64,000 nucleotides of DNA from Haliotis rubra (taxonomy: Eukaryota), in NCBI RefSeq assembly GCF_003918875.1, contig NW_025766990.1, positions 930,001-994,000 of the forward strand. The letters are read 5' to 3'. The position numbers were made by a program, and so were the translations under genes. The notes under the pieces were generated by a model. That model was not told where the DNA came from. It worked only from the letters and a program-made list of their open reading frames with translations, and ran no database searches. Positions 15,352 to 50,353 of the stretch are shown here, piece by piece; positions within the stretch are counted from its first letter, which is position 1; each line of letters begins with the position of its first letter.

Positions 15352-15859
15352 GTATGGCAGATATACGTTCATGTAAATGTTCAGCAAATAGTGAAATTTC
15401 ATGTCTGATTTATTCAAGCATGGGCATAAGAGAACTTATATTTATATGTATGAAAGGAAAATCAACAGAGAAAGGAAACCTTGCTTAAAAAAGACTGTGT
15501 TTGACTTATGTTTATAAAGGGAATCAATTCCATATTATTTTTAGTCTCCAGGACTCCAGTGTCTCCATGTTTTGTATCATATTTGATTACAACATGGGAT
15601 TAAGTGGTATCTCTTACCAAGTTAATGTACTTGATGTTAGTAGCTGGGTGACTGAAATGTTCAGTAGGACTGCGTTGTGATATCTCAGAGCTGTCACAAA
15701 ATTACTGACGTTCTAGTTAAGTGCGTATACACCCTTCCGGGTTTAGAAAACTACATCGTAAATTGAACTAATCATTCATAAAAAGGACTTGACAATTAAC
15801 TTCCTTAGCGTTAAGTATTATATTACAAGTGGTCGCTATATATCATTTGTGTGTTTCAG

Positions 15860-18805: not shown

Positions 18806-19463
18806 GTGCCTGTGTCTTTTTCCCACTGAAGCTGACAAACTACTTATCAGACAATCATCAGTGTATAATTGATGGTTTGGAGGATTTGGGTTATGACCAG
18901 TCTTTCGTGTACATCGGGAGGTCTCTTGTTGTCAGCCTGAACGTGGACAATGACAGAATCAAAGTACCCAAACAGCTTATATGCGATACCATCATATTTG
19001 CACACAACAGACCTGTTACTGTTCTCAGTTTTGTGAGAACGAATGACAAACCAGAGAAGTATGCCTTGTACAATTCACTTCTATCGAGGCACATTACAAA
19101 GATCATGCGGACATCACTGCAGGAAAATATCAGTGTCATAAGTGGAGTTGTTGAAGAGCAAGGTGAAATCAAGAAAAGAATTGAAGAGTTTGAAGACAGG
19201 GCAACATTGTTTAGCATAGCAGGATCCCACGAAATGAACGCATCACGGAGTAGAGCTGCAGCAAAATCAATCCTGCAGACAGCCGCTGAATGTAAAGCAG
19301 CATCTTTGATAGACACAGGACCTGAAAAGGAAGGCACTGTACGCACGTTGAGCGAACTGGAATTTAAACAGATGATCGATGTGATTGACGATGCAGGCGT
19401 TTGTTACCAGCCCTCCATCACCTTTCAGAACAACAGGGTGGCTCTAGAATCTACAGTCTTGAG
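18806..19463 (+). CDS. Schlafen-like gene, SWADL/SWAVDL-type middle-domain exon
   Basis: Strong acceptor TTTTTTCTCCAG; SFVYIGRSLVVSLNV...LICDTIIFAHNRPVTVLSFV parallels the SLFN motif LIFSRSWAVDL...VICDALLIA..SPPILYT; donor GAG|GTAAAA, phase 2. Confidence 0.75.
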
Positions 19464-19551
19464 GTAAAAAGGCAAACCAGTACAGTGCTAAACGTCTCAT
19501 AGGTTTCATAGGGTCACTATAAACACGCATCCCAAGTTCGTATTATTACCA

Positions 19552-28425: not shown

Positions 28426-28449
28426 AAAAAGGTTGTTGCAAACATAAAA

Positions 28450-28632
28450 TATATTTGGGATTACACTTTCTCAGTAGAAGTCGCGGTGACTGAATGGGTT
28501 AGATGGCTGACATCTGTGTGCTGGCGATTAAGTGCCTCACTCTAAGGTTGTGGGCTCGAACCCCGGATGAGACTCAACCCAACAGAAGTACTAGAATCTT
28601 TCTTTACTGAGAAAAACGTAATCCCAAATATA
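28450..28632 (+). mobile_element. Inverted-repeat element enclosing a tRNA-like cassette (duplicated at ~32683..32850)
   Basis: TATATTTGGGATTACACTTTCTCAGTA and TACTGAGAAAAACGTAATCCCAAATATA flank GTCGCGGTGACTGAATGGGTT...GGGCTCGAACCCC. Confidence 0.65.
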
Positions 28633-30131
28633 ACACGTTACATTTGACCACTTTCTAAACGGCATTGTGTATTCATTTGACGGGAGTGCTTTTCTTTCAC
28701 CTTGATCGCCATGTATCAGACACGATAATGTTATTTACTTTTTCAGATTTCGGATACAGAAGTCAAGGTCAAATATGTGTTAGTCTCTCATAATTGTGTT
28801 TGCTTGGTCCGCAAATAGAATATTCACAAACGACAGCAGTTCGGTTATTATCACAACTGTCTACGATGAAATAGGTACATGCAATTACATAAGTAATTTA
28901 GTAAGGAAGGTGTTGCAATTTAGTAATTTTGTAAACCAAAACTATCAGAATCGTGAATACACCTGTATTAATGTTACTGTAAATGTGCTTAATTTTTCAC
29001 CAATGTATGTATTCAACTGTTGAAAAGCTGAAAAGCTGTGTTTTCAAACAAATGACGTGCAGTCAATCGATCGTTCGTAATGAAAACAATAAATCTTTAA
29101 AAAAAATGAATGAAAAGAAAGATAAAACGATGTTTTTCACAATAAATTTGCATGAATTGCATTACTCAAAATACAGGGGAAGTACAAATCATATTTGCTG
29201 CATTACATACACAGGCTTGAACAGCACTCGATTATCAGGGTTAACCTGAGCAAACTGTTTACAAATGTTATCTTGTTACTTTATTTGGAAATGGGGCGTA
29301 GTTTGCGTTCGTTTACATTCTTGTTATAATTTCATTATATTGACGTCCATTAATTCTTCACAAATAGCACATGTCATTGCATTCCAATTGCGTAGGTCGA
29401 TGCTCATGCTATTGATTATCTGATGCAGACTCGATTATTTACAGACTGCCGTCACACACAGCTGGAATATTGCTGAGTGCGGCGTTAAACAGAAAGCAAA
29501 GCAAACAAACAAACCAACTTTACAAATACTTCCTCAAATTGTTAGCATAAACTGACGCATTACCACCATACATGTAGAAAATACTGGACAACCTTTCCAT
29601 GTTCCTGTTACCAGACTTTGCGCAATATCAGTAACAGGAACGAGGAAAAGTTTTTGACATGTTGTACAAATGACAAAACTGATATTTTTGCCACATCTAA
29701 ATTTCTATGGCACACCGTTTGCCCGACATGACTGTTCAGAATGACCTGACATGGGTGTCCGGGTGAGCCTATAAGAGTACAAATTGGTAGATGATGTCAA
29801 ATATCTATCAGCAACATATTTACTGGACAGGATTTATTCGCCTTTATGCGGAAATATGATTTACAATGCGGGGCTCTTTGCTAATATTACGTATTGCTTC
29901 ATATAACGAAACACAACAAGAATCAGCGGGATATGGTGTTGATATGTATAATCCGTATACATAGAGCATATGACACTGAGTATATGTTTAAATTGAAAAT
30001 GTATAAAATTTGAATTAATAAACTTAAAAATATATTTTAAAATATATTCTGTGTACAGGTGCTTCACAAAATATGCGACCTACATCCTCACCGTGTCATT
30101 GTGTTTCTCTGATCATAACCCTTCTTAAACG

Positions 30132-30230
30132 TTATTTAGCGTTCTTTAAATACGAAATATTCGCAACTAACGTTTCAGCAATTTTCCTCTAGCCTTGTGG
30201 TACTCCTGCTTCAATTTCCGCCTTAGAATT
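30132..30230 (-). pseudogene. 3' remnant of the duplicated ATP-grasp ligase gene
   Basis: NSKAEIEAGVPQG*RKIAETLVANISYLKNAK* versus intact NSKAEIEAGVPQGWRKVAEMLVENISYLKKSK*; fused directly to half a SINE. Confidence 0.9.
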
Positions 30231-30624
30231 CAGCGTGACGAACGGACGCTTTAACCATGAGGCTACCCTACCTACAGCGAGTACAGCGCGATATAAACTA
30301 TCTTTGTTCCTTGAACTAAACTTTATTTTCTCTCAAGGCTTAATACATAGCATAATAAGGGTTTACAGAGGTCAATACATCAAGTAAGTAATGGCGACAT
30401 AAAGACTATTTAAAGTTGCATAATATAGAGCGACAAAGGTTGACAATTTAATCAAATCCGAGACATTTTCAGTTTGAAATAAACTTATCATTTTAAATAC
30501 AGATGATCTGACGATTACTCGATAGTTTAATTCTCGCTGGAACCAGATCTTGGCTCGATACATCGGTCATAAAATGTTATGTTCCTCGCTTGACACCGTA
30601 CTGTAATTTGCTATTAGGGCCAAA

Positions 30625-30815
30625 GTGTTTCTGCACGTAGCAGCACTCAAAGTTTTGAACAGGCAAGTAGCAGCTCTCAAAGTGTTGAATAGGCAAGTAG
30701 CAGCTCTCACAGTGTTGAATAGGCAAGTAGCAGCTCTCACAGTGTTGAATAGGCAAGTAGCAGCTCTCAAAGTGTTGAATATGCAAGTAGCAGCTCTCAC
30801 AGTGTGTAGGCACGT
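30625..30815. repeat. 30-bp minisatellite, ~6 units (about 3 units at 36584..36680)
   Basis: Unit GCAAGTAGCAGCTCTCA(A/C)AGTGTTGAATAG. Confidence 0.95.
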
Positions 30816-31984
30816 AGTAGAGACTCCAGGAGTAATAAACGGGGCTCATTTCTTTATTTCCATAAAGGAAGACAAACAGCACAGAATACCAGCCCATTAT
30901 ATCTCAGTGGGCGACCTGTCAGAGGCGACTATCGGGTGGTCAGGCTCGCTTACTTGGTTTACACATTTCATCGTAATCCAGTTGCGTAGATCGATGCTCA
31001 TGCTGTTGATGACGGGATTGCCTGGCCCAGACACGATTATTTACAGACCGTCGCTATATAGCTGGTATATTGCTGAGTGCGATGAGTGCCAAATAGCGAA
31101 CCAGTTGACGACTTACCAAAATTACCAAGGCACGCCAGTAGTTACAGTAAATGTTTCACAGTTATCATTAAATGTTTGACATAATTGCCAACATTTCCCT
31201 TAGTATTTGTGTATCTGGGTGTACATCATGCAAGGCTTCGTACGCAGGTACACGTGAGAATACCACAAAAGGTGAACAGATATTAATTAAAATATTTGAT
31301 TGATTTGCAAAAAGATCGTTGAATAGATGAAAGATCGCAAAGGTAAGTTTCAGTGCTGGTAAGAAACTCTTTTGTTTGAAATAAATCGAATAAATCGGAT
31401 CCCATTTTGGTTTCTTGACAAATGTTCAAACGCTAAATACCTGTATCACTTCGGGCATTCAGAAGTATGCTGCCATGTTATGATTTCATTGAAATATTAG
31501 TCAGTGAGGAGTGTAAGTTGAACACAGAATATACCATATGGCGAACTGCTGTGTAGTTTCACGTTTATTCATGGATTTTGATAGTAGTATAATGTTTGTT
31601 TGATAATTTGAATGTTTATTAATCTGCTTAAACATGGAAATATTAGCCTTCATGCCTGAACACGATATTAAAGTAATTTCTATAATTCATGAACTATCCT
31701 CAATGTTTGCATATGAATTTAAATATACACACTAGAGCTTGGAGTCAACAGCTCTTGCACATACAACATGAAGTGTCAATATAGTTCGATGTTCATGCTG
31801 TTTATCACTGGATTGTCTGGTTCAGACTCGATTATTTACAGACCACCTCCATATAAGAAAAACAAGATTTATGGATGTCAACGTCTTTATTGTGAATAAC
31901 ACGACGTTTCGGGAGTGTATATTTCCTCTTTCATTCAGTAAAAGGCTATTCTACTACTAACCATTATTGTAGTTTTATGCCAAT

Positions 31985-32657: not shown

Positions 32658-34128
32658 AAAAGAAGGTAGTTGCAATCATAAAATATATTTGGGATTACAC
32701 TTCCTCAGTGGAAGTCGCGGTGACTGAATGGGTTAGATGGCTTGCGTCGTGTGCTGGCGATTAGGTGCTTGACTCTAAGGGTGTGGGTTTGAGCCCCGGA
32801 TGAGATTCAACCCAACAAAAGTACTAGAATCTTTTCTCTACAGAGAAACAGGTACATGTAATTCCACGAGCAATTTAGTAAGGAACGTGTTGTAATTAAG
32901 TTATTTTTAAATAAAAATATAAGAATCGTGAATACACCTGCATTAATGTTACTGTAAATGTTGCTAAATTTTCACCAATGTATGTTTTCAACTGTTGAAA
33001 AGCTGACAAGTTGTGTCTGCAAACAAATGACGTGCAGTCAGTCGATCGTTCGTAAAATAAAACAATAAATCGTAATTATAAAATGAATGAGAATAAAGAA
33101 AACGGTCTTTTTCACAATATATTTCCATTTATTGCATTACGCAAAATACAGGGTAAGTACAAATCATATTTGCTGCTTTACGTAATAATACAGACTTGAA
33201 TAGCACTCGATTATCAGGGTTATCCTGAGCAATCTGTAAGTCACCAGTCAAATAACAGTTGTAACAAATGTTATATTGTTACTTTATGGGAATATGGGGC
33301 GTAGTTTGCGTTAGTTTCTTTGTCATAATTTCATTATATATTGACGTCCATGAATTCTTTACAAATAGCACATGCCATCGCACCCCAATTGCGTAGATCG
33401 ATGCTCATGCTGTTGATCACCGGATTGTCTGGTTCAGACTCGAATATTTACAGACCGCCGTCATATATCTGGAATATTGCAAACCAACAAAGAAATTTAA
33501 ATCAACTTTACAAAAGTACTTCCTCAAAGTATTAGCATATAGAGACGCGTAACTGCCATAAATGTGGCAAATACTGGACCACCTTTCCCTTGTTCCTGAT
33601 ACGTGACTTTGCACAATATCAGTACCAGGAACGAGGAAAAGTGTTTGACATGTTGTACAAAACGACAACACTGATATTTGTGGCACATCTGAATTTCTAT
33701 GGCACACCGTTTGCCCGACATGACTGTTCAGAATGACCTGACAAGGGTGTTCGGGCGAGCCTACAGTGAAATAAAGGGTAGACGATGTCAAATATCTATC
33801 AACAACATGTTTTTGCTGGACACAATTCATTCGCCTTTATGCAGGAATATGATTTACAATGAATGATTCTTTAGTAATAGTACTTATTGATTCATATGAT
33901 GAAACACAAAAGGAATTAGCGGGATATTGAGTTAGCTGTTCGGTAATACCCGACACGGCGCTATATATTCCGTATACATAAAGCATATGGTAACACTAAA
34001 TAGGTTTAGATGTAAAATGAATAAAATTTAAAAATAAAATTTAAAATATATTCTGTGTACAGGTCCTTTACACAATTTGCGACCTATGTCAGCCCTAATG
34101 TGTCATTGCGTTCATCTTAGCTTAAACG

Positions 34129-35043
34129 TTATTTAGATTTCTTCAAATACGAAATGTTCTCGACCAACATTTCAGCAACTTTCCTCCAGCCTTGTGGTAC
34201 TCCTGCTTCAATTTCCGCCTTAGAATTGTAGACAGTGTTACAGTTGATATCTATGACGTATGGAACACCGTCTGGGCCATAAATAAACTCCACCGCGCCA
34301 TTATCCAACCCGGGAGTTTGAAACAATTTGGTACACTTATCAATTACAGGATCCTCAAGGTCTTTCAGAATCTGGAACCTGTCTTTGGGTAAATCATCAG
34401 GACAGTAGTTGGAAGAAAAGCCATCGCACATTGTTGCTTTGCTGACGTAAAGAAACTGTTGCGCAACGAACTCTGCTCTGTAAACACCGGAAGTCGGGGG
34501 GAGATAACTCTGAATCAAATACAGTCCAGTATACGAACCAGGCAGCTCCTTTTCCGATTCAAATTCTGCGACATTATGGTACAGCTGTATATTAATACCA
34601 TGTCCACCTCTATCTGGTTTGATAACAAAGGGTGCATCCGTTCCGAAATGTTTCTGAATTAGTGCCTTTGTCGGTCTGGAAGTGAAGACAGTCTGAGGGA
34701 TATTTAAGCCACAGTCTTTGGCCATGACGTACTGGAAGGCTTTGCTGTCTTCGATGTCTATAGCAGGGAGACCATTCACTACTGTTACGTTGTGATGACG
34801 TAACCACTTGATGATGACGCGTGCCTGCTCCAGGGATAATGGGTGACCACGTGTATGTGACGTTGGACTACATCTGTTGTAGAAGATGGTGTTCTCTGGT
34901 GGGGATGACGTGAGGTCGATGTCAACTTCGTCAGAAACCCATTCGTCAACTACGACGTCATAATCCTTCAATGCATCTTTGACCAATGGAAACCACTTTG
35001 GGTTGTCATGGAGCACTATTATTTTGTATACTTGGTCGGCCAT
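34129..35043 (-). CDS. ATP-grasp ligase, RimK/alpha-L-glutamate-ligase-like (bacterial-type subfamily), 304 aa, intronless CDS
   Basis: Motifs VLHDNPKW, FYNRCSPTSHTRGH, VVNG...EDSK..QY, FVIKPDRGGHG, LIQSYL, YRAEFV..FLY, YCPDD, EFI..PDG.PYVIDINCNTVYN; ATG 35043 lies 6 nt after the acceptor TTTTGTTCAATGTGCAG. Confidence 0.9.
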   Translation of the reverse strand: MADQVYKIIVLHDNPKWFPLVKDALKDYDVVVDEWVSDEVDIDLTSSPPENTIFYNRCSPTSHTRGHPLSLEQARVIIKWLRHHNVTVVNGLPAIDIEDSKAFQYVMAKDCGLNIPQTVFTSRPTKALIQKHFGTDAPFVIKPDRGGHGINIQLYHNVAEFESEKELPGSYTGLYLIQSYLPPTSGVYRAEFVAQQFLYVSKATMCDGFSSNYCPDDLPKDRFQILKDLEDPVIDKCTKLFQTPGLDNGAVEFIYGPDGVPYVIDINCNTVYNSKAEIEAGVPQGWRKVAEMLVENISYLKKSK

Positions 35044-35282
35044 GTTTACCTGCACATTGAACAAAACATTCTTTAGTTTTTTGTTAATTGAACAGAGTGA
35101 GAAAATGACAATTTGAAAAAATGCATTGTTCATGTATGATGAATAATTAACACAATGGTTATTATAAAAAGAACATTCGTTATTTCATCATTAAGTCATC
35201 AGTCAAATATACACATGAAATAAACATATGTACACCGAATCGCCATTAGATTGTTTACACTTCGTTTCTCCTAACGTTAGTA

Positions 35283-35430
35283 CGCACGGTGCGGTTGAGA
35301 AGCCTGAAGATCTGGGTTATATTCCCCACGTGGGTACAATGCGTGAAGCCCATATTTTGTTCCCCGCTGTGATATTACTGGAATATTGCTAAATGCGGCG
35401 TAAAACTAAACTCACTTACTTAATCACTCA
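35283..35430 (+). mobile_element. SINE family A, diverged
   Basis: TTCCCCACGTGGGTACAATGCGTGAAGCCCAT...GGAATATTGCTAAATGCGGCGTAAAACTAAACTCAC. Confidence 0.85.
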
Positions 35431-36056
35431 CGTACGGCCACGGTGTTGTCACATCATATAACCAATGCATTACGCTTGAGATAAATTAGAAGACTTTTGA
35501 TTGGTTAATAACCATTGTATATGAAACCATACTAACTTCACAGGTAGTATGGATCCATCTTAACGTGTTCCAACGGGCGGTAAGGAAGACCTTGCAGTTT
35601 GCAACCTTTGACATTGATATGTAACGCACTTGGAGAATTCAATTGTTATCATCACGAAAAACTGATTTATCAAAAAAATATAAATACATATCTATAAATT
35701 GGCAATGGCTTGAAGTTAAAGCTTTATCCTAAGCGTTGGTATTATTTGAAATAACAAGTCACTTAAAACGTATTTATAAGCCTACACGAGTTACATCCCT
35801 TAGTATATCTACTGATAATGTTCGACTACGATGACGATTATGGGAAAAGCTGTGCGTTCCATACCGTTGGTGGATAATACTAGTGTGTCGTGTTTCATTT
35901 AAAGATACCTATGTAATGACATTTTCTAGCATTTGGCACAATATCTAATGGGTAATAAATGGTAATTACACGGCCTTCTGCCAGGTAGTTTGGAATGGTA
36001 CGGTCCGAATGAATCTGGTATATAGCCGTGTAACTAATAGTATCACGGTTACAGCG

Positions 36057-36221
36057 TGAGTAAGTGAGTATGGTGTTACGCCACTTTTAGCAATATTCCA
36101 GCAATATCACGGCGGGGACACCAGAAATGGGCTTCACACATTGTACCCATGTGGGGAATCGAACCTGGGTCTTCAGCGTGACGAGCGGACACTTTGACCA
36201 TTAGGCTACCCTACCGCCCCC
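36057..36221 (-). mobile_element. SINE family A, full length
   Basis: Family A consensus; TSD GTTACAGCG on both sides. Confidence 0.9.
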
Positions 36222-36774
36222 GTTACAGCGAGTACAGTGAGATATCAACTCTCTTTATTCTTTGAACTGAACTTTATTTTCTCTCAAGGCTACATACATA
36301 GCATAATGAGGGTCTACAGAGGTCAATACATTAAGTAAGTAATGGCGACATAAAGACTATTTAAAATTGCATAATTTAGAACGACAAAAGGTTGACAATT
36401 TAATCAAATCCGAGACATGTTTACTTTGAAATAAACTGATCATTTTAAATACAGATGGTCTAACGATTACTCGATAGTTTAATTCTTGCTGGAAGCGGGT
36501 CTTGGCTTGATACGTCGGTTATAAAATGCGACCAAGGTGTTCCTCGCTTGACATCGTAACTGTAATTTGCTATTAGGGCCAAAATGTTTAGGCACGTAGC
36601 AGCACTCAAAGTGTTGAATAAGCAAGTAGCAGTTCTCACAGTGTGTAGGCAAGTAGCAGCTCTCACAGTGTGTAGGCACATAGTAGAGACTCCAGGGAGT
36701 AATAAACGGGGCTCATTTCTTTATTTGCATAAAGGAAGACAAACATCGGCGGACACGAGCCCATTATATCTCAT

Positions 36775-36950
36775 TGGACGACCTGTAAGAGGCGACTATC
36801 GGGTGGTCAGGCTCGCTTACTTGGTTGACACATTTCACCGTAATCCAATTGCGTAGATCGATGCTCATGCTGTTGATCACGGGATTGCCTGGCCCAGACA
36901 CGATTATTTAAAGACCGTCGCCATATAGCTGGTATATTGCTGAGTGCGAT
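36775..36950 (+). mobile_element. SINE family B partial copy (further partial copies ~29370-29500, 30905-31080, 31785-31852, 33368-33480, 38960-39060, 60445-60565)
   Basis: Shared TAGATCGATGCTCATGCTGTTGATCAC.GGATTG.CTGG.CCAGAC.CGATTATTTA core. Confidence 0.85.
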
Positions 36951-39900
36951 GACTGCCAAATAGCGAACCAGTAGATGACTTACCCAAATTACCGGGCACG
37001 CCAGTAGTTACAGTAAATGTTTGACATAATTGCCAACATTTCCCTTAGTATTATCATACAAGGCTTCGTACGCAGGTACACGTGAAAATACGACAAAAGG
37101 TGCACAGATGTTAAGTAAAATATTTGATTGATCTGCAAAAGTTCGTTGAATAAATGAAAGATCGCAAAGGTATGTTGCCCCTTTTATAATTGTTTTGTTG
37201 AAATTGTTATGTTTTCAGTGCTTGTAAGAAACTCTCTTTTTTTAAATAAATCGAATAAATCGGATGCCGTAGGTTATCAAGAAGCCGTCCCCATTTTGGT
37301 TTCTTGACAAATGTTAAAACGCTAAATACCTGTATCACTTTGGGCATTCAGAAGTATGCTGCCATGTCATGATATAATTGAAATATTAGTCAGTGAGGAG
37401 GGTAAGTCGAACACAGAAAATACCATATGGTGAACTGCTGTGTATTTTCACCTTTATTCATGGTTTTTAATAGTAGTATTATATTTATATGATAATTTGA
37501 ATGTTTATTATTCTGCTTAAACATGGACATATTAGCCTTCATGCCTGAACACGATATTAAAGTAATTTTTATAATTCATAAACTGTCCTCAATGTTTGCA
37601 TATGAATTTAAATGTACACACTAGAGCTTGGATGCCTTTCTGCGTGCAAGCCATATTATGTTGATGACATATACTAGTATTTAGTTATTTAGTTCATGTT
37701 TGAAAATTAGCCCTATGTTGTAATTTCCGAGTTGTACTAGCTGAGGGTCAGATTTGTGTAAAGACCCTAAGCAATAAAGATTACGTTGTGCTCAAGATGT
37801 GCTCACGACGCCCTTTACAGAGTTGAACAGATTTTTGTCTGACCCAAAGAGGCGCGTATGTTTCATAAAGGTCCCTTGACCTACCTGCAAGGAAAGCTCG
37901 GTCATCACTACCGTCACATGTTAATCGAGTAATGTAGAGACCGAGGCAGTGAAGCACGTTGTCAGCTAGAGGGGCGTGTACTTATCATGTCCTTGTGCAC
38001 AATTACCTGCCAGGTATGCACCTACACTCCTTACAGTCGTGTGCAGAAACCTACCTTTTATCTCACGGGTATGTGTGGAGCTATTTCGGGCGGCCACTGA
38101 AGTCAGATCGACCCAATTTAAAGTCAGGTGTGTACAGTCTGATCGTTTCGTTACGACCACAGCACGGCCCACAATGTATGTACAGTCTGACCGCTGTGTC
38201 TATTTGTAATAACGGCCACGAGGTTTTGAATGTCTTTGTTGAAGTGATTGTGAGATTTCAAACTCGCGAAGCTTACGTAAAATACCTGAAATAAGTAAGC
38301 CTCAATGTCGCGTTCAAAAACATTTCACTTCACTTGCAACATGCGTGCATGCACAAATGTGTGCGTGCGTGCGCTTGAAGTAGCCCGTTCTATAGCTTAG
38401 GAGTGACAGCATTCCGCAGTCAGTTTAACAGGACTTTCAACCCCAAACTCAAGATACCCAACTCACTACGTGAGTGAGTGAGGTTAGTTTTACGCCGCTT
38501 TAGGCTACTACCACAACGTTAGTTGTTTACTTTGTGTTGCTTAGTGCAGATGTAACGCAGGTGAGCTTCCTTATTGACAAAGGTTGACGAGTGTGTCGTA
38601 CAGATATGAACATGTTGGTTCAGTTTGGTAATATTTTGACATGCACATTTACTTATAAACGGTGTATATGTTCACTGAGTCCTTAACAACAGGCGCTATA
38701 AGAAAGAAAAACAGATTTTCTTACCTCCATGAATCTTCCAAGCTCTGGAATGATTCATGATTGTCACTGTGTGAAACCTCCTCCTTAGCAATCAAAAAAG
38801 AGAATGTGAAATGAAACAACATTACTGGTTAACGGGCCATACGTTTGTAGATGCCTTCATTCCTTGTCACAGGTACATTTACAAACTGACTGTAAAGGGT
38901 TGGTTCGCTTTGAGTCTACAGCACTTGCACATACACACTCGCACAACATGAAGTGTCAATATAGTTCGATGCTCATGCTGTTGATCACTGGATTGTCTGG
39001 TTTCGACCGCCTCCATACAGTTAGAATGTTGCTTAGTTAAACAACAAACCAACAACAACCAACTCGTATAGGTGGAATCCACGTGTTTGCATTATAGCGC
39101 AAAAAACAGACATTTTTTTTTTCATTCGAGCTGAAACTATTTAAATCCAAATCAAATATACTGTCAGCATTAATGGAGATTAATGGACAAAAACTACAAC
39201 GGATGGTAAAGGAATGATTCATATGAATACTGACGTCTTCAACCTAAACCATTTATGATTTACTTTATTTCTGTCTGGAAGATAAGTGCCGTTACTCTTG
39301 CCTTTAATGCCCTAGCAAAGCAATAAACACGTTGTGCATGTTTGAATAAGCTATCAACATGTGATAAAGCACCAAATGAGCATTTACACTTACATGTGTA
39401 GAACATAAGTACATATAATTCAATCAAAATCAGCCATAAAACGAGTGAGAAAATTCATATGGTCCTAATGTAAACAACCATGGAGTACCACACTGGAGTG
39501 CTCGGCACTATCATTTGCCCAAACACCTGGTATGCCAATATTGATGTGTTTCTAAACGTGCGCGCCCTGTGATCTATACACTAACATATATGTTTTACCT
39601 GCAAAGATAAAGTAGCTTTGAAGTGCAATATGCTTTATTGGATAAATAACGTGGTTATTTTAAGGTGCGTTAGATTTGATTATTTTTTTCTGAAGTTGGT
39701 GAATGGTTCTTACTGTTATCGATTGCATTAATTAGTTTGTCTTTAAGAGCTTGTATTTTACAATGTTGCCTGTTAGAGTGTGAACTGAGAAATAGGTATG
39801 CACTAACGATATTGTTAGTCTGAAGATAACCTTGAACCGTTTGCTACAACAACTTACATGTACCTAACACATGTTCCCTGTTTTCAGTACACCTAAGGTC

Positions 39901-41307: not shown

Positions 41308-42966
41308 TGCTCTCCCAAAAAAGAAACGCATATGGGAATTTCAACTGTATTTATATGTTTATTTTGAAACATCTTGTAGGCTTTATGAGTCAATGAAATA
41401 TAGCGAAATTGCACACTGGGAATGAAGACTTATCCGTCTTTGGCACCAACTCGAGGAAAGTCAGTTTGAGTGTCACATGGACACGTGTGGTGGCGCTGAA
41501 GTCAATACGTCGTGTGACCACCGTGGGCATCCAGAACTGCACGGCATCACCTCGGCATCGAACGAATAAGTCTCAGAATCTCGTGTTGCCCAATCGCAGC
41601 CCACTCTGCCTGTAGTGCCTGTGCGAGTTGCTGAAGTGTCTGGGGCTGAGGGTTACGGCGTCGCACCCGTCTGTCCAGGGCATCCCACAGATGTTCGATC
41701 GGGTTTAAGTCCGGTGATCTTGAGGGCCATGGGAGCACATTGATGTTGTGGTTCTGGAGGAAGTCTCTAGTGTGACGTGCTGTGTGGAGCCTGGCATTGT
41801 CCTGTTGAAACAACTCCCTCTGGCGATCAATGATTGGAAGGAGGTGTGGGCGTAGGATTTCGTCACAGTACCGTTGTGCTGTCAGGTTGCCCTGGATCAT
41901 CACCAAATCACTTCTCCTACGGCAGGTGATCGCTCCCCACATCATAACACTTTCCCGGCCGAATCTGTCCACCTGGGGAACGCAAGCGTAGGCGAAACGT
42001 TCACGTCGACGTCTGTTCACCCGCATTCTTCCATCGCGTCGTTCCAATAGAAATCGTGATTCATCACTGAACCAGATTCTACGCCAATTCGGTAGGTTCA
42101 AGGCCTGACTGACTGACTGAGTTTGGTTTTACGCCGCTTTCAGCAATATTCCAGCAACATCACGGCGGGGACACCAGAAATGGGCTTCACACATTGTACC
42201 CATGTGGGGATTCGAACCCGGGTCTTCGGCGTGACGAGCCAACGCTTTAACCATTAGGCTACCCCACCGCCCCTTCCAGGCCTGAACGTTGGTGCACCAT
42301 TGAACTCGATGTCGACGATGTTGTTGTCGAAGTACAGGGCCAAAATAAGGTCTTCTGGCACGTAAACCAGCTTCTCTCAACCTGTTACTGACGGTCTGTG
42401 CAGACAGCCTCTTCAATCCGGGTATTTGTCGAGCGGTACTGGTCGCCGTAGCTGTTCGATTACGCAGGTGATGTACCCGGATGTAGCGATCCTGCGCCGC
42501 AGTGGTCGCTCGAGGTCGCCCACTACGAGGGGCATCTGCTACCGAATTCTGCCGGCCATATCTCTCTCCCAGAGCCGTGAAATGGTGCTTTGGTGAACAT
42601 TAATGCGTCGGGCAACTGCACGTTGAGACTGGCCAGCTTCAAGCCAACCAATGGCGATATGACGGTTGGCTTCACTTAGACGTGGCATTTTGCGTTCGTC
42701 AACAATATTCCAAATACAGTGAATAATCGACAGACAGCGATCAACCTTCTATACCCATCAATGAGACTATCTGATCCCAAACTTTCACGTGCATTGCATG
42801 TGAATTGTGAATTCTGTGACACTACACGCTGAAATTGAAAATCATGCTGTTAAATACGGGTATTTTACGGACGGTGCGTTTTGTTGTGATGTTTCAAAAC
42901 ATAAACACCATAGGACTCAAAAACAGAGCAAAACCGTTCATGATGCGTTTCTTCTTTGGGAGAGTA
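41308..42966 (-). mobile_element. Full-length Tc1 (DD34E) element, inactivated
   Basis: TIRs T(A/G)CTCTCCCAAA(G/A)AAGAAACGCAT, TA flanks; transposase from ATG 42688 (MPRLSEANRHIAIG) with FSDESRF, FQQDNAR, SPDLNPIEHLW; frameshift near 42570, SINE insertion, TGA at 41547. Confidence 0.95.
42109..42273 (-). mobile_element. SINE family A inserted in the Tc1 transposase
   Basis: 12-bp TSD TTC(A/C)AGGCCTGA at 42097-42108 and 42274-42285. Confidence 0.95.
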
Positions 42967-44390
42967 TATGTATATATGTATATACTTAATTCTGCGTGGC
43001 TGAAAACATGTATTAAGCAATAGTAACCATATTTTCTGGTACCAACACCTCAAATCACATCAATACTTGGAGCGAATAAATGATTACGCGTGTACATTGC
43101 TTCTTACAATAGTCCAGCAAACTAAATAGATTCATTGTGTGTACTTAAACAGCGGAGTGCATGGGTTGATAGAGTGTTTCTGGTTTTGGATTCCATTTAA
43201 GTTTAGTAATATCATCGATAAATAATATATACGTCCTCCGGAGAGAGTAGTAAGTCCCAAAGTTTTCAAGGTAAATTTAAACCTACTATTATTTTTAATC
43301 GTAATATATATGTTCTTTTAAATTATGGCTTGATTATCTAAAATTGCTAACAGCTGAAGGGAGAGTGTAAATCCAGCTAGGGTCCACGCAGGAAGCAAAT
43401 GTACTGTTATCCAAAGGGTCCTTATTTAACTCCGCCCTTTTACCTGACAGGTAGTTGTGTTACCTGTCAGTTATCCCACACCTTGGAGGGCGTTTCTTTA
43501 CCGGAACTACGGTATACCCTCGAACTTCGGTCCTGACAATTCTGGATGTGCGAGAGGTACCGTGTCAGTACCCGAGGGCCCTTTGGACCTTTACCGTAGT
43601 TCCTCCAGCAACCACAAGACGATGATCTTCGTTCCACAGTTTTATTAACACTGCGTTGCTGGCCCAACCCACTCTATTTGTCACATAATTAAGAGACTTC
43701 AGCTGGAAAGCTTCAGTCTCAGTCGAAATGCTGGTGCTTTGAGTTTGTTTCTTAGTACGAAAGTAAGTGACAATCAGATGAGAGCTGATGCGCCCTAGAC
43801 CCCAGGCTTGGGGTTCCTAGGAGCACACTCGTTCTCGGCTTCAGGTCTCGTACCACTCTCTCGTCTCTCAGCTTTGCTCCAGCTTAAACCTGGGTTCCTA
43901 CGTCACAACCAACACCCTTTTCCATTTTTTCCATTGGTCAATAACCCATAACCTGACTATCTATCTATTCTACTCTCCCCTACCGTGAGGTGGATTCTCT
44001 CAGAGTCTCTCTCTCCCTAGCCATATATGACTTGTAGAGTACCAAGAACTGGTAGCTAGGTCCCCGGCCACGCCGCCCGTCTTGATAGTATAGTAGTTTT
44101 ACCTTACCTAAGCTATGAGTCACTTCACCTTGCCCCCATCAGCCCTAACGACCTACTTTCATGTTTATTACCTTCGTTACTGACTTTCACTTTACAACGT
44201 TATTAATCACTTCATATCTTAAATATATTATTAAATCCTCTCATAATTTGTATCTTATCACCTCTTAATCACCTGTTATTAATAATGTCAATTGTATATC
44301 TATTATTGCAGCAAGTACCATAATCGCATGCCTATATGAATGAATATCTGTCAAAAGAATTTTAATTTCTAATTTTATTGATCTATGATA

Positions 44391-47300
44391 ATCACTGCCC
44401 TAGAACTCTCTGTTCCAAATCATCATCCACTCTATCTCCTATCGATCTACCTACCCCCTTCGAATCGATCCATAGATCTCTACAAAATGTGCCTTGATGA
44501 ACTCCAAGAAGCATATTCTGCCTTGTCTGAAAGGAGCCCGGTAATCATCCTAGGCGACTTTAATGCAAAGATTGCAGGCCCAAGAGCAAACGTTAACCTT
44601 GACCAAAGAGCTAGCATGCTCGGGGAGCTCTTGTCAGAAAATTCACTAATCTCTATCAACATGCAGAGCTTCTGCACAGGCCCAGTGAATACCTTCTATG
44701 CATATACAGGAGGCCCCCAGACACCAATTGACCACATCGTAGTACCAACTGAGCTTATGTATATCATCCACTCGGCAGAAGTGATTGATGATAATCCACT
44801 CAACGTTTCCGACCATCACCCAGTTGTATGCCTTCTTGCAATTGACCTACCTAGTCAACCAGCTGCAAATCCTCCTATACGTAGACCAGCTTGGAACAAA
44901 GCCCTCCAGAACGGCTCAATCAAGGACTACACACATGCAGTCTCTAACTCCCTCTGGGGTAAGCAGCTGCCAGCTCTAGACTGTGACAGGGAAGATATTG
45001 AACACCTTACTGATATAATTACTATGGCCCTCACTATGGCTGCGTCTGACTGTCTTCCAGTGAGACATTTCAGGCGTTATCTAAGACCATACTGGAAGGA
45101 ACAAGTGAAAGACTTCCACGACCTGATGTTATCTTACAGACACAAATGGATTCTAGATGGGAGACCTAGAGGCATGACTTACACTAGCTTCCGTGACTAC
45201 AAGAAATCCAAAGACAAATTTCGAGCTGCTATGAAAGAAGCTGCAGCACTTTATGAAACAGAGCACTTCAACAATCTTGATAAACTATATGACATTGACC
45301 AGAAAACATTCTGGGCTCTCCTCAACAACAGAAACAAGAAATCACACATTTCAACCATAAGTGTATCAGGGAACCATACCACAGATTCCTTGGAAATCTG
45401 CCATGCACTCGCTGACCACATGAAGACTATATTCAGCAAAGGGGTAGATGATCACTTTGACCAGAACTTTAAAGACCATCTAGAAGGCAGAGTTGCTGAA
45501 CTAAAACATTGTACCTCTAACAAGATAATCGACGTCAAGTGCCTTCTGACCTCTCAGTCTGAGGTAAGCAAGCTTTGCAAATCTCTGAAAAACAACAAGG
45601 CCTGTGGTTTTGATGGAATCTACTATGAACACTTGAAACATGGAGGCTCAACTCTTCATTATTATCTTTCTGAATTATTCAACAGAATAATCACTACAGG
45701 TTCTATCCCATCCCAGTGGAAGAAAGGTATCATCATCCCAATCTTCAAAGGCGGAGGCAAACCAAGGACGTCCCCAGATTCATATAGAGGAGTGACTTTG
45801 TTGCCTGTTATGTCAAAACTTTTCGAACAGGTCATAGCGAACCGGATCCCACAATTCCAAGACTCCACGGATTTCCTGATCCTCTGCAATGCGGCTTCCA
45901 GAAAAGCCTCTCGTCGTCTCTTCATGCATCATTCCTCCTTCAGGAGACAGTCTACCACTACAAGGAACGGAATGACTCTCTGAAAGTGGTGTTCTTGGAC
46001 AGTAGTAAAGCCTTCGACACTGTGTGGCATGATGGGCTACTCTGGAAGTTGAAGGAGTTGAACATTCATCCAGGTGTGTGGCGCATTTTCTGCAACACAT
46101 ACCTGGAATGGAAAGTTGTGTTCTTGCCAATAATACTTACTCATCCTGGTTTAAACTCGACCGTGGGTGAGACAAGGTAGCGTCCTTTCTGCTAAACTCT
46201 ACTTGGTTTACATCAACGAGCTTCTGACAAACCTATCACATCTTAAGAAGGGAGCATTCGTACTGGATCTCCACCTCGCTGCTCCAACTCAGGCAGATGA
46301 TATCTCACTGATCAGCCCTATCACAGCTCATCTACAATCTATGGTAACAGAGTGCCAGAACTACAGTGCCAAATGGCAGTTCACATTCTCTCCTTCAAAA
46401 AGCAACGTATTGGTCTTCAATCCGCAAAAAAAACCAAGTGCAATATCAAACTTTACGGAAAGAAGTTACCTGAAGTGGACAACACAAAGCATCTTGGCAT
46501 TCTTCTCGACTCACACCTTAGCAGCCACACTCGAACATCAAACGCAAGTTCGAAGATGAAGTCAGCTGCAATGATGCTGATGAAATCAGGCCTACACAAC
46601 AGTGGGCTGAATCCAATTACCAGCTCCAATCTTGTCAAGTTCAGGTGTCTACCCAAAGCCTTGTTTGGGTGCGAATTGTGGTCAGGTTTGAAAAGAGCGA
46701 CATTATCACTGTCGAAAGGGCACAACGATTCTGTTTAAAGATGTGTCAGGGGCTCCCAAGAACTACTAGATCTGACATATGTAACTCCCTGATTGGATGG
46801 TACTCGGCAGAATCACATATTGACACAAAGAAGCTGTTTTTTCTTGGCTCCTTGTGTAACAGTAAGAAGCACCTACTTTGCTTCAAACTCTTTATCTCAC
46901 GCCTGTTTGCGTTTAGAAACTGCATATTGAAGACAAGAACAGGATTTATACCAGATATAGTTCATGTACTTGAAAAATACAAACTGAGGCACTTTCTCGA
47001 GAATTTTGTCTCCTCCGGCATCTTCATGAGTCAACTCTCCTGGAAGAAGATTGTAAAAGACTCTGTCATGGAATACGAGAAGTCCTCCTGGAACCAACGA
47101 ATGACATCAGATCCAGATCTCAGACACTTCAGGACATTACACCCTCGATAGAGCCACACCCAGCTTGGCTACTTGCCAAAAGATACCCCTCCTTGAAACA
47201 ACAATGCATCTTCACAGTACAATTGTGTGCTCTTTGGCGTCCTCACCGTGTGTATGGACCTTGTGATAAATGTAGTGTGAACTGTGCAGACCCCTTGATC

Positions 47301-48082: not shown

Positions 48083-49790
48083 TCATTGGCCACAATTCAG
48101 ATTATAGTTTTGCTTTACCTGAAATATATGATAAACAAATTTGGCTAAGTTGAAGGTTAATACCTTGGTTTGTAAACCTCTGTCATTTTTGCAAAAAGGA
48201 CATAATCGGTTTTCTAAAGCTAATTTTGGTCGAGCCCCTCTTCCTTTCTCAATCATAAGTGAATGAGAAGATAATCGTAGTCGTGTCAAGGCTACCCTAT
48301 AGTTTATAATATCAATTTGAGATAAATACGGTTTTCGTCACAGGTGATAATCTTAATCCAATATTTCATAATGCGTAACGATCTAATAGTAATCAATGGC
48401 AGTACGCCCATTTCACCATAGACAAAAGCTGATGGTGTTGAACTTTTAACACTCAGAACCTGCTTAATAAACTTTAAGTGGACCCTTTCGATAGCTGGCG
48501 CTTCCATAAATCCCCAAACTTCACAACCATAGCATAAAATTGGCAGTACTAAGCTTTTAAACAATTGATACTGCTGCGCAGGAGACATATATGGATTGGA
48601 CAACAACAGCCTGCTCCGATAGAGTCTTTTGTGCCTGGGAAAAACTACCTGTTGCTGAGAAGACAATACCCAAATATTTGAAACTATTAACATTTTCTAG
48701 TACCTGATCACCATAATACCAGATTTCTCTTTTGGACAATCTACCCCCTTTTCTGAAAATAACAACCTTAGTTTTATCTGTATTAACATTGATTGATGGC
48801 CCATTTGTCGCAATATCTCTGTAAAAAACAAGACCACGTTGTAAGCCTTCGATGGATTCACTGAACAAGACCATATCAACAGCAAATAATAACATTAATA
48901 ACTTAATGCAAAACACTGCCATGCCAATATCATTGCAAGCAGAGAATCAGACACAATATCATTTATAAACAATGAAAATAATATAGGCGATAATTTTTCC
49001 CCTTGCCTGACACCTATACTTGATGAAAAGAACTCTGAATACCTATTTCCAGGAAGTTTAACACAAGAGGAGACATCCATGTATATATTTTTGATTAATG
49101 ATAGAAATTTAGAATTAATACCCAAAGAATACAATTTAAACCAAAGAGCTTGCCTGTCAACATAGTCAAAAGCCTTTCGAAAATCTACAAACACACAATA
49201 TAATTTCACCCCTTTACTCAAGGCTAAATTTATCAATCCGTGAAGAATAAACATACAATAAGCCGTGCTATAACTCTTTCTAAAACCAAACTGTTCTTCT
49301 ACCAAGAGGTAGTAGTTATCACACCACTGTTTAACTCTGTTATTTAGAACACTCGTAAACAACTTGCTGACACAAGAAAGAAGTGTAATCCCTCAATAAT
49401 TATCTGCAACTAATTTACTTCTTATTTTATGAATGGGGACAATAACGCCCTTTCTCCATTCAGAGGGTTATTTACAAGATGTTTAAATAGCATTAAATAA
49501 CATAGCAATTACTGGAGATAAATATCTTCTCCGGCCTTAAGGAATTCATTAATAATGCCATCGTAACCTGCTGCTTTATTACACTTCAACTTACTAATTG
49601 CCACATGTACTTCAACCGCAGTAATGTCGCGGTCTAACTCGTGAACCCAGTGCTGGACCATACCATTGTCAGATTGCCTAATCACCTCGATGTATTCAGT
49701 TGGTGCAATTTTCTGTAGGAAATGTTTTAAATAATGTTGTCTGGAAATGATGTGCAATGACTCAGTCACGATACCTCCAAGCACTGGTCC
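48083..49790 (-). mobile_element. Degraded LINE RT/3' fragment (second family)
   Basis: KAAGYDGI, QFGFRK, FVDFRKAFDYV, GVRQGEKLSPILF, LFAVDMVL, FKYLG, YGCEVWG, RLRLSSH.L.IE.GR, CPFC. Confidence 0.92.
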
Positions 49791-50254: not shown

Positions 50255-50353
50255 CTGGTTCGATTCCCAACATGGATGCCAATTTCTTATTTCCGCTGCC
50301 GTAATATTGCTGAAAATATTGATAAAGCGGCGTAAAACTAAACTCACTCACTC
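50255..50353 (+). mobile_element. SINE family A remnant overlapping the stop codon of the adjacent gene
   Basis: GGTTCGATTCCCAACATGG...GCTGAAAATATTGATAAAGCGGCGTAAAACTAAACTCACTCACTC. Confidence 0.85.

What the first reader, a model, noticed from the sequence alone, without database searches (positions are those of the whole stretch)
34129..35060. Bacterial-type ATP-grasp peptide ligase apparently domesticated in an animal genome
Seen: an intact 304-aa intronless CDS with ATP-grasp motifs (IKPDRGGHG, LIQSYL, EF...IDINCN). A spliceosomal acceptor (TTTTGTTCAATGTGCAG) lies 6 nt before the ATG, implying a 5'-UTR intron. Host SINEs flank it and there is a local tandem paralog, which argues against contamination. 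From recall of the family: HxNPxW, YNRxSxxSHTRGH, CPxD and DxNxNTxYN mark a bacterial RimK-related alpha-L-glutamate-ligase subfamily rather than animal RIMKLA/B, glutathione synthetase or synapsin. Inference: a horizontally acquired amide-bond ligase making an unknown small peptide or glutamylating a protein.
Basis: partly seen in the sequence, partly recalled or inferred. Interest (0 to 1): 0.8.

Follow-up and report, generated by a model that had tools for sequence, protein, structure and literature searches.

The report
Old animal ATP-grasp ligase gene in abalone
This abalone gene is a real, selectively constrained host gene for an unstudied ATP-dependent ligase of a mostly bacterial family. 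It is not a recent bacterial import into abalone, because it belongs to an old, intron-bearing animal branch also found in another snail, amphioxus and a flatworm.

Summary
The 304-aa ORF (minus strand, 35043..34129) is real and intact. It folds confidently as a three-domain ATP-grasp enzyme. The closest solved structures are ArgX/LysX and RimK, at 13-18% identity and below every curated family cutoff. It sits in host DNA: SINE-like repeats flank it, the orthologous Haliotis rufescens locus is collinear, and dN/dS is 0.14.

The "tandem paralog" is only a dead 32-codon remnant with an in-frame TAG.

The family is very large and mostly bacterial (257 or more GTDB species). The abalone protein, however, falls in a fully supported animal-only clade (UFBoot 100) with Batillaria, Branchiostoma, Macrostomum and three unlabelled contigs.
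- The non-abalone members have spliceosomal introns.
- Amphioxus and flatworm share one phase-0 intron position.
- A species-tree arrangement is not rejected (AU p=0.46).
- The clade does not nest in any labelled bacterial group. Its weakly resolved neighbours are an amoebozoan transcript, probable giant-virus contigs and unlabelled marine sequences.

So the gene is an ancient, patchily retained animal gene. Ancient transfer and early-eukaryote ancestry both remain open.

Substrate and expression are untested.

The parts
34129..35043 (-). Single-exon CDS of 304 aa plus the TAA stop. It encodes an ATP-grasp ligase of an uncharacterised RimK/LysX-like family.
   Evidence: ORF and translation. 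AF2 pLDDT is 94.8. ArgX/LysX/RimK align at Z 24-26. The H. rufescens ortholog is 89% identical at the protein level, with dN/dS 0.14.
35044..35066 (-). Acceptor-like motif TTTTGTTCAATGTGCAG followed by GTAAAC, directly upstream of the ATG. It is a candidate 3' end of a 5'-UTR intron.
   Evidence: The sequence is. The motif is conserved in H. rufescens. Analogous ...CAG motifs lie 3 and 14 nt before the ATG in L002 and L014. No RNA support was obtained.
35044..35213 (-). Upstream stretch that still aligns with the H. rufescens locus. It may be intron end, UTR or promoter-proximal sequence.
   Evidence: blastn aligns window 34119-35213 with L003 9825-10931 at 85% identity. The alignment is shown.
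34597..34623 (-). IKPDRGGHG: the ATP-binding Lys142 and the glycine-rich loop.
   Evidence: K142 and G149 are invariant and G147 is nearly invariant (90% or more) in 51 family members. The profile positions equivalent to K142 and the loop align with the K and GxxG of ArgX and RimK.
34225..34296 (-). AVEFI ... IDINCNTVYN: the putative Mg2+/phosphate ligands E252, D265 and N267, plus the family-specific NTxYN motif.
   Evidence: E252 and N267 are invariant. D265, T270, Y272 and N273 are nearly invariant.
34393..34404 (-). CPDD: the family-invariant Cys214-Pro215. In animals it lies in a loop shortened relative to the bacterial, protist and virus-like members.
   Evidence: Alignment A2 shows the deletion shared by all animal sequences. 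C214 and P215 are invariant.
34843..34884 (-). FYNRCSPTSHTRGH: a family-specific motif of the N-terminal domain.
   Evidence: S59 and R65 are nearly invariant. Position.
34993..35010 (-). HDNPKW: a family-specific N-terminal motif.
   Evidence: W17 is invariant and N14 nearly invariant.
35304..35430 (.). SINE-like interspersed repeat 260 bp upstream of the ATG. A second, inverted copy lies at 36049-36220.
   Evidence: Self-blastn finds 8 or more copies across the window.
33369..33480 (.). SINE-like interspersed repeat about 650 bp downstream of the stop codon.
   Evidence: Self-blastn finds 7 or more copies across the window. Related copies occur in the H. rufescens locus.
32660..37632 (.). 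Copy B of a local segmental duplication. This copy contains the intact gene.
   Evidence: Self-blastn gives collinear blocks against 28426-31743.
28426..31743 (.). Copy A of the duplication. It lacks the equivalent of 34228-36171.
   Evidence: Self-blastn.
30135..30230 (-). Dead remnant of the gene: the last 32 codons, 81% identical at the protein level, with an in-frame TAG at 30189-30191 where the intact copy has Trp.
   Evidence: tblastn and the sequence read-out.

Best explanation
The locus is a functional abalone host gene with a single coding exon. It probably has a 5'-UTR intron ending just before the ATG.

It encodes a cytosolic three-domain ATP-grasp enzyme. The protein belongs to a large, uncurated family related to LysX/ArgX and RimK.

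By inference from fold and conserved residues, it binds ATP-Mg and activates a carboxylate as an acyl-phosphate. The carboxylate is most likely that of an acidic amino acid, a small peptide or a protein C-terminus. The enzyme would then ligate an amine to it, forming an amide bond. The substrate is unknown.

In evolutionary terms, it is not a recent bacterial acquisition by abalone. It is the vetigastropod member of an old animal clade of this family. That clade is at least as old as gastropods and probably as old as Bilateria. It has been lost from most animal lineages. In the abalone lineage the coding-region introns were lost.

The ultimate source of the animal clade is unresolved. It could be an ancient transfer from bacteria, from a giant virus or from a protist, or inheritance from early eukaryotes.
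For: Shown:
- The ORF is intact.
- The AF2 model has pLDDT 94.8 and pTM 0.91.
- The best structural matches are ArgX/LysX (Z 25.8, 2.5 A over 271 residues) and RimK (Z 24.5).
- The family profile hits ArgX at 1.8e-11 and RimK at 1.1e-10. The profile positions for the K142-equivalent Lys, the Gly loop, the QEYI motif and the R189-equivalent Arg align with theirs; the window protein itself reads QSYL at 178-181.
- K142, G149, R189, E191, E252 and N267 are invariant in 51 members.
- Host integration: flanking interspersed repeats, and an ortholog on a 63-Mb H. rufescens scaffold with collinear upstream blocks.
- Constraint: dN/dS 0.14 at dS 0.39.
- The animal clade has UFBoot 100 and SH-aLRT 99 and shares a loop deletion.
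- Introns: Branchiostoma has 4, Batillaria 3, Macrostomum at least 2, and an unlabelled animal-type contig at least 3.
- Branchiostoma and Macrostomum share a phase-0 GT..AG intron at the same alignment column.
- A species-tree-compatible topology is not rejected (p-AU 0.458).
- The labelled bacteria form a separate clade.

Inferred: the ligase chemistry, the loss of coding-region introns in the abalone lineage, and the 5'-UTR intron.
Against:
- The window protein has Ser where the family consensus QEYI has Glu (QSYL).
- Pfam and NCBIfam hits are all below their curated cutoffs.
- Only one intron position is shared, which could be coincidence (roughly 1-5% by my estimate).
- Macrostomum sits on a long branch (1.7).
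- Three members of the animal clade (P0003, P0005, P0006) have no organism label.
- Only the best 150 of 717 exhaustive hits were visible, so the true animal distribution is uncertain.
- No conserved bacterial gene neighbour points to a substrate.
Confidence: 0.75

Rival explanations
1. Recent, lineage-specific horizontal transfer of a bacterial gene into the abalone or vetigastropod lineage.
For: The coding sequence is intronless in Haliotis and in the L002 relative. Most of the family is bacterial.
Against: - The closest relatives are other animals, in a 100/99-supported clade with intron-bearing members.
- The best bacterial identity is only about 35-37%.
- There is no nesting within any labelled bacterial clade.
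- CDS GC is 44%, against 40% for the window.
Confidence: 0.04
2. There was no transfer into animals at all. The family was present in early eukaryotes and has been inherited vertically, with massive independent losses. It would survive in a few animals, Amoebozoa and other protists, and would have been captured by giant viruses.
For: - Animals, the Paramoeba transcript P0020, the probable giant-virus clade and unlabelled marine sequences all lie outside the labelled-bacteria clade. In the ML tree they form one weakly supported assemblage.
- Introns, one shared intron position and species-tree compatibility fit vertical descent.
Against: - Support for the eukaryote-plus-virus assemblage is very low (11-35% UFBoot).
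- The Paramoeba sequence comes from a transcriptome and could be a contaminant.
- Most neighbours are unlabelled.
- This scenario needs very many losses.
- The root of the tree is unknown.
Confidence: 0.25
3. The ORF is a decaying or unexpressed relic: an unprocessed or retroposed copy that is not functional today.
For: No RNA evidence was obtained. A neighbouring duplicate has decayed. H. rufescens also carries a broken fragment beside its gene.
Against: - The ORF is intact in two species separated by dS 0.39, with dN/dS 0.14.
- All invariant family residues are kept.
- The start context and the upstream 170 bp are conserved.
Confidence: 0.07
4. The enzyme is an ATP-grasp kinase or a non-ligase member (like ITPK1/PPIP5K or synapsin) rather than an amide-bond ligase.
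For: The profile also hits inositol-trisphosphate 5/6-kinase (E 1e-5). Synapsin (Z about 22) and PPIP5K2 (Z about 20) appear among the structural matches.
Against: The ligases ArgX/LysX and RimK are the top matches by both sequence profile and structure. Their profile scores are clearly higher: 47 and 44.5 bits against 28 bits for the kinase.
Confidence: 0.1
5. Bacterial or viral contamination, or a misassembly, in the abalone genome.
For: None beyond the mostly bacterial make-up of the family.
Against: - Host interspersed repeats lie within 260-650 bp on both sides.
- An ortholog sits at a collinear locus in an independent chromosome-scale assembly of another species.
- The gene lies inside a host segmental duplication.
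- DNA runs of the same species hold the CDS.
Confidence: 0.01

Closest known systems
LysX / ArgX (LysW-dependent amino-group-carrier ligases of Thermus, Sulfolobus and Thermococcus)
   Same: Best structural match (Z 25.8, rmsd 2.5 A, 271 of 304 residues aligned) and best sequence-profile match (E 1.8e-11). It has the same three-domain ATP-grasp architecture and the same ATP-binding Lys, Gly loop and QEYI-type motif.
   Different: Identity is only 13-17%. The TIGR02144 score is 23 bits against a cutoff of 276. No LysW-like carrier or lysine/arginine biosynthesis neighbours were seen in the window or in the two annotated bacterial loci, and no gene family recurs next to the gene in more than 5 of 80 bacterial loci. 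The family-specific motifs (HxNxxW, SxSSHxRG, CPxD, NTxYN) are absent from LysX.
RimK (ribosomal protein S6 poly-alpha-L-glutamate ligase) and the automated name 'alpha-L-glutamate ligase'
   Same: Second-best structural and profile match (Z 24.5, E 1.1e-10). Bacterial members of this family are auto-annotated 'alpha-L-glutamate ligase' or 'RimK family'.
   Different: TIGR00768 scores 25.4 bits against a cutoff of 143.4. PF08443 gives no hit at E<=1 for the window protein. The C-terminal Mg-site motif is D-I-N-x-N-T-x-Y-N. From my recollection, RimK and Ddl have an E-V-N-x-x-P-G type motif there. No activity has been shown for any member.
Animal RIMKLA/RIMKLB (NAAG and beta-citrylglutamate synthases)
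   Same: They are ATP-grasp ligases encoded in animal genomes that make small acidic amides. This rests on my knowledge of the family.
   Different: RIMKLA/B are true RimK-family members (from knowledge). The abalone protein fails the RimK models. A direct alignment with RIMKLA/B was not done because no tool-supplied sequence was at hand.
MysC-type ATP-grasp of the mycosporine/shinorine pathway in anthozoans
   Same: It is a precedent for a prokaryote-like ATP-grasp enzyme with a patchy distribution among marine animals (PMC3640398 abstract).
   Different: It is a different ATP-grasp family, part of a four-gene pathway and restricted to anthozoans. The abalone gene is stand-alone, with no pathway partners nearby.

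Membership tests
ATP-grasp superfamily | Three-domain ATP-grasp fold | tested here: met
   AF2 pLDDT is 94.8. Foldseek E reaches 8.5e-16, and VIA-align gives Z 20-26 to many ATP-grasp enzymes over residues 4-302.
ATP-grasp superfamily | ATP-binding Lys, Gly-rich loop and acidic/Asn Mg2+ ligands conserved | tested here: met
   K142, G149, E252 and N267 are invariant and D265 nearly invariant in 51 members. The profile positions equivalent to K142, the loop and R189 align to the K, GxxG and R of ArgX/RimK. Caveat: the window protein has QSYL where the consensus is QEYI.
ATP-grasp superfamily | A Pfam ATP-grasp model reaches its gathering score | tested here: not met
   The best hit is PF02655 ATP-grasp_3, at 14.2 bits against a cutoff of 23.2, E 0.046.
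RimK family (TIGR00768 / PF08443) | Score at or above the curated cutoff | tested here: not met
   TIGR00768 scores 25.4 bits against 143.4. PF08443 gives no hit for the window protein. Bacterial members score only 55-62 bits.
LysX/ArgX | Equivalog model score, and a LysW-type carrier or AAA-pathway context | tested here: not met
   TIGR02144 scores 23.1 bits against 275.6. No gene family recurs next to the gene in more than 5 of 80 bacterial loci, and the recurrent ones scanned are generic enzymes, not lysine or arginine pathway genes.
Uncurated family annotated 'alpha-L-glutamate ligase / ATP-grasp domain-containing protein' (HxNxxW, SxSSHxRG, CPxD, NxNTxYN) | Full-length homology and the family-invariant residues | tested here: met
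   There are 717 hits at E<=1e-3, of which 320 are at E<=1e-10. A profile search finds 1011 proteins. W17, K142, G149, R189, E191, Y199, C214, P215, E252 and N267 are invariant and all present in the window protein.
Animal clade of that family | Monophyly with other animal sequences and the shared short CP-loop | tested here: met
   UFBoot 100 and SH-aLRT 99. The deletion is shared. An animal-specific HMM outscores the general HMM by 74-251 bits for these sequences only.
Recent prokaryote-to-animal HGT | The recipient sequence nests within a donor prokaryotic clade and is absent from other animals | tested here: not met
   The animal clade lies outside the labelled-bacteria clade. Orthologs exist in Batillaria, Branchiostoma and Macrostomum.
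Recent prokaryote-to-animal HGT | Physical integration in host DNA | tested here: met
   Host repeats flank the gene, and it has a collinear ortholog in H. rufescens.
Expressed host gene | A spliced, polyadenylated transcript | not testable with these tools
No run on record as RNA holds the gene.

The most novel reading that the evidence does not exclude
A bilaterian-age ATP-grasp amide ligase family survives in only a few marine invertebrate lineages: abalone and other gastropods, amphioxus and macrostomid flatworms. It would make an as yet unknown small peptide or protein C-terminal modification. It may have entered early animals or other eukaryotes through giant-virus or bacterial gene flow, since the nearest non-animal relatives include probable giant-virus contigs with conserved synteny.
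Probability: 0.3. Interest if true: 0.6.

Novelty: new member of a known kind. Interest (0 to 1): 0.42.

Why it matters
The finding corrects an attractive but wrong story. This is not a fresh bacterial gene domesticated by abalone. It is a member of an old, patchily retained animal branch of a huge, wholly uncharacterised ATP-grasp family.

That family has thousands of bacterial members and no known substrate, no structure and no curated model. Its animal branch offers a tractable case of extreme differential gene loss, or of very old gene transfer. It also points to a possibly unknown amide or peptide metabolite in marine invertebrates.

The practical value is modest until a substrate or an expression pattern is known.

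Tried and rejected
No read-level test of expression, splicing or flank junctions was therefore possible.
Local scripts did use the whole window file as a BLAST subject and scanned 33500-34131 locally for poly(A) signals, finding none. Of that stretch only 34059-34131 was printed.
- The look-up of sequencing runs was run twice. No holder is on record as RNA, and the small shares were uninterpretable without laying reads.
- The IMG/VR scan with the family alignment found no confirmed relative. The giant-virus link therefore rests only on the gene content and synteny of three metagenome contigs.
It was repeated with the 13-sequence alignment.
- A search for a conserved bacterial operon partner found none. 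No neighbour family occurs in more than 5 of 80 loci, and the recurrent ones are generic SDR, DAO, hydrolase and kinase genes. An SDF-family transporter lies 38 bp upstream in Clostridium bovifaecis only.
- Two literature searches found no paper on this family in animals.
- The word-index protein search with an animal-only profile found no further named animals.
- ARAGORN found no tRNA-like head in the flanking repeats between 28000 and 34000.
- I considered and rejected contamination, a giant-virus insertion in the host (there are no viral genes nearby, and the flanks are host repeats, LINE and DDE remnants), and membership in RimK or LysX proper.
Full report
**Observation**

The minus strand carries an uninterrupted ORF. 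Its ATG is at 35043 and its TAA stop at 34129-34131, giving 304 aa. An upstream ATG at 35133 would add 30 residues. That stretch has frame-breaking indels relative to Haliotis rufescens, so it is not conserved coding sequence.

The string TTTTGTTCAATGTGCAG lies 6 nt before the ATG.

The window has no N runs and is 40.4% GC. The CDS is 44.4% GC.

**Host context**

The best database hit is 'uncharacterized protein LOC124110294' of Haliotis rufescens. It is 89% identical at the protein level and lies on a 63-Mb scaffold. The window is therefore from another abalone species.

The two loci align at 85% nucleotide identity over the CDS plus 170 bp upstream. Further upstream blocks are collinear.

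Two families of short interspersed repeats flank the gene, each with 7 or more copies in the window. They lie 260 bp upstream (35304-35430, and inverted at 36049-36220) and about 650 bp downstream (33369-33480). Related copies occur in the H. rufescens locus. Contamination is effectively excluded.

The window also holds a Schlafen-like gene, LINE endonuclease/RT fragments and a DDE transposase remnant, all typical of host DNA.

**The 'tandem paralog'**

A segmental duplication pairs 28426-31743 with 32660-37632 at 78-87% identity. The first copy lacks the equivalent of 34228-36171, which holds nearly the whole CDS and its upstream region. It retains only the last 32 codons (30135-30230). These contain an in-frame TAG at 30189-30191, where the intact gene has Trp.

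H. rufescens likewise has a broken fragment, corresponding to residues 33-80, about 190 bp downstream of its intact gene. These are decayed duplicates, not a second gene.

**What the protein is**

Curated libraries give only sub-threshold hits:
- Pfam ATP-grasp_3: 14 bits against a cutoff of 23.
- TIGR00768 RimK family: 25 bits against 143.
- LysX: 23 bits against 276.

Bacterial members of the family also fail these cutoffs.

An AlphaFold2 model built on a 51-sequence family alignment is very confident (pLDDT 94.8, pTM 0.91). Its best structural matches are:
- ArgX/LysX: Z 25.8, rmsd 2.5 A over 271 residues.
- RimK: Z 24.5.
- Synapsin, glutathione synthetase, DcsG, D-Ala-D-Ala ligases and the RiPP macrocyclase PsnB follow. 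All matches are at 10-18% identity.

A family profile hits ArgX (1.8e-11) and RimK (1.1e-10) among solved structures. The profile positions for the ATP-binding Lys (K142 in the window protein), the glycine-rich loop, the QEYI motif and the conserved Arg (R189) align with theirs.

W17, K142, G149, R189, E191, Y199, C214, P215, E252 and N267 are invariant in 51 members. All are present in the window protein.

It is therefore an ATP-grasp enzyme of a distinct, uncurated family close to LysX/ArgX/RimK. By inference, it forms an acyl-phosphate on a carboxylate and ligates an amine. One caveat is that abalone has QSYL where the family has QEYI.

No signal peptide-like N-terminus is evident by eye.

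**Constraint**

Between the window gene and the H. rufescens ortholog, dS is 0.39, dN is 0.054 and dN/dS is 0.14 by the Nei-Gojobori method. This indicates purifying selection.

**Family distribution**

An exhaustive HMMER scan of 1.84 billion representatives found 717 relatives at E<=1e-3, of which 320 are at E<=1e-10. A profile search of the word-indexed collection found 1011 proteins at E<=1e-10. The named ones are overwhelmingly bacterial: Bacillota, Pseudomonadota, Thermodesulfobacteriota, Opitutaceae and others. They are auto-annotated 'alpha-L-glutamate ligase' or 'ATP-grasp domain-containing protein'.

A single peptide pattern recovered relatives in 257 GTDB species genomes. Among the 80 best that were listed, many are marine Bacteroidota, Balneolaceae and Alpha- or Gammaproteobacteria. 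All are at or below 37% identity to the abalone protein.

**The animal clade**

The closest relatives of the abalone protein are not bacterial. They are:
- a second Haliotis paralog group (H. rubra, 58% identity);
- an intronless copy on a 33%-GC eukaryote-like contig that shares no repeats with Haliotis (57%);
- two unlabelled Logan contigs (43% and 40% over the full-length alignment; 47% and 42% over the matched stretches);
- the caenogastropod Batillaria attramentaria (44%);
- Branchiostoma floridae and B. lanceolatum (41-45%);
- the flatworm Macrostomum lignano (35%).

An animal-specific HMM beats the general HMM by 74-251 bits for these sequences, plus one exon-sized fragment, and for no others among the top 150.

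In a careful ML tree (LG+C20+F+G4 PMSF, 84 rows) the nine animal-type sequences form a clade with UFBoot 100 and SH-aLRT 99. They also share a deletion in the loop after the invariant Cys-Pro.

The inferred order has Macrostomum outside Branchiostoma and the molluscs, which differs from the species tree. Forcing Macrostomum together with the molluscs costs only 3.2 log-likelihood units (p-AU 0.458).

**Introns**

The Branchiostoma gene has 4 coding-region introns, Batillaria 3, Macrostomum at least 2, and an unlabelled animal-type contig (L012) at least 3.

Branchiostoma intron 1 and Macrostomum intron 1 are both phase 0 with canonical GT..AG ends. They fall at exactly the same column of an ungapped, well-conserved alignment region, between window residues 107 and 108. 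I estimate a chance coincidence at roughly 1-5%. This favours an intron-bearing gene already present in the bilaterian ancestor.

The Haliotis genes and the L002 relative have no coding-region intron. All four nevertheless have a pyrimidine-rich ...CAG 0-14 nt upstream of the ATG.

One inference fits this pattern. Loss of coding introns through reverse transcription tends to spare 5'-most introns. That would explain an intronless CDS with a retained 5'-UTR intron. This remains untested.

**Where the animal clade attaches**

All labelled bacteria fall in one clade (SH-aLRT 98 in the quick tree). The animal clade lies outside it, in a poorly resolved zone (supports 11-35% UFBoot). That zone also contains:
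- a Paramoeba atlantica transcript (MMETSP);
- several unlabelled short contigs;
- a clade found on three dense, low-GC marine contigs.

Those three contigs share the gene order Exo_endo_phos, ATP-grasp, SNF2 helicase and HMG-box protein. They also carry glycosyltransferase genes, and one carries a DNA methylase gene. That content is typical of giant viruses. This is an inference, since IMG/VR gave no confirmed relative.

A donor therefore cannot be named. Ancient transfer into early animals and descent from an early eukaryotic gene with massive loss both remain open.

**Function**

No neighbour family recurs in more than 5 of 80 bacterial loci, and the recurrent ones are generic enzymes. In Clostridium bovifaecis an SDF-family dicarboxylate/amino-acid symporter gene lies 38 bp upstream. 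This is a weak, single-species hint towards acidic amino-acid substrates.

The best available mechanism is an ATP-dependent carboxylate-amine ligation of the LysX/RimK type. A kinase-type ATP-grasp activity is a minor alternative.

**Expression**

Two run searches found the CDS in DNA-like runs of the same species, but no run on record as RNA.

**Literature**

Two full-text searches found nothing on this family in animals.

**Verdict**

The gene is a genuine, constrained, host-integrated ATP-grasp ligase gene of a predominantly bacterial family. It is, however, an old and patchily retained animal gene rather than an abalone-lineage acquisition.

Noticed in passing
L001:3989-8259; L095:5441-9554; L096:3591-7683: Three dense, low-GC (about 31% in L001) marine metagenome contigs share the gene order Exo_endo_phos, ATP-grasp, SNF2 helicase and HMG-box protein. 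They also carry GT2 or GT25 glycosyltransferase genes, and one carries a DNA methylase gene. They look like giant-virus (Nucleocytoviricota) genomes carrying a member of this ligase family.
   Followed up: partly
L003:11109-11267: H. rufescens has its own broken fragment of the gene (residues 33-80, 72% identity, with an insertion) about 190 bp downstream of the intact copy. Partial tandem duplication and decay therefore occurred in both abalone species.
   Followed up: partly
window 15829-16917 and 18877-19467 (+): Schlafen-like ORFs (PF04326 SLFN_AlbA_2, just below cutoff). The scan already noted these as s1-341759.
   Followed up: no
window 44385-45983 (+), 48895-49362 (-), 41547-42101 (-): A LINE-type endonuclease/RT ORF, a reverse-transcriptase fragment and a DDE_3 (Tc1/mariner-like) transposase remnant.
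   Followed up: partly
window 53428-54899 (-): Overlapping long ORFs encode a highly repetitive His/Pro/Thr-rich sequence (units such as HTPLPQGAH...ITPxSTPHYPREH). They have no Pfam hit. It is unclear whether this is a coding repeat protein or a minisatellite.
   Followed up: no
window 50344-51741 (-) and 58495-59628 (+): Two long Ser/Arg-rich ORFs (465 and 377 aa) without any Pfam hit.
   Followed up: no
window 30577-30897 and 36584-36856: A minisatellite of about 30-bp units, read as CESCYLPIQH or VAALKVLNRQ repeats depending on the strand. It is present in both copies of the segmental duplication.
   Followed up: no
P0016 (WP_094925755.1, Lottiidibacillus patelloidae): A bacterium whose name refers to a limpet carries a family member. 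It falls with other Bacillota in the labelled-bacteria clade, far from the animal clade, so it is not a donor candidate.
   Followed up: yes
L004:2486-3322 and 3607-4443: The high-GC marine contig carrying P0321, a member of the P0082 cluster that is one of the nearest non-animal relatives, has two tandem 278-aa ORFs with no Pfam hit. The organism is unknown.
   Followed up: no
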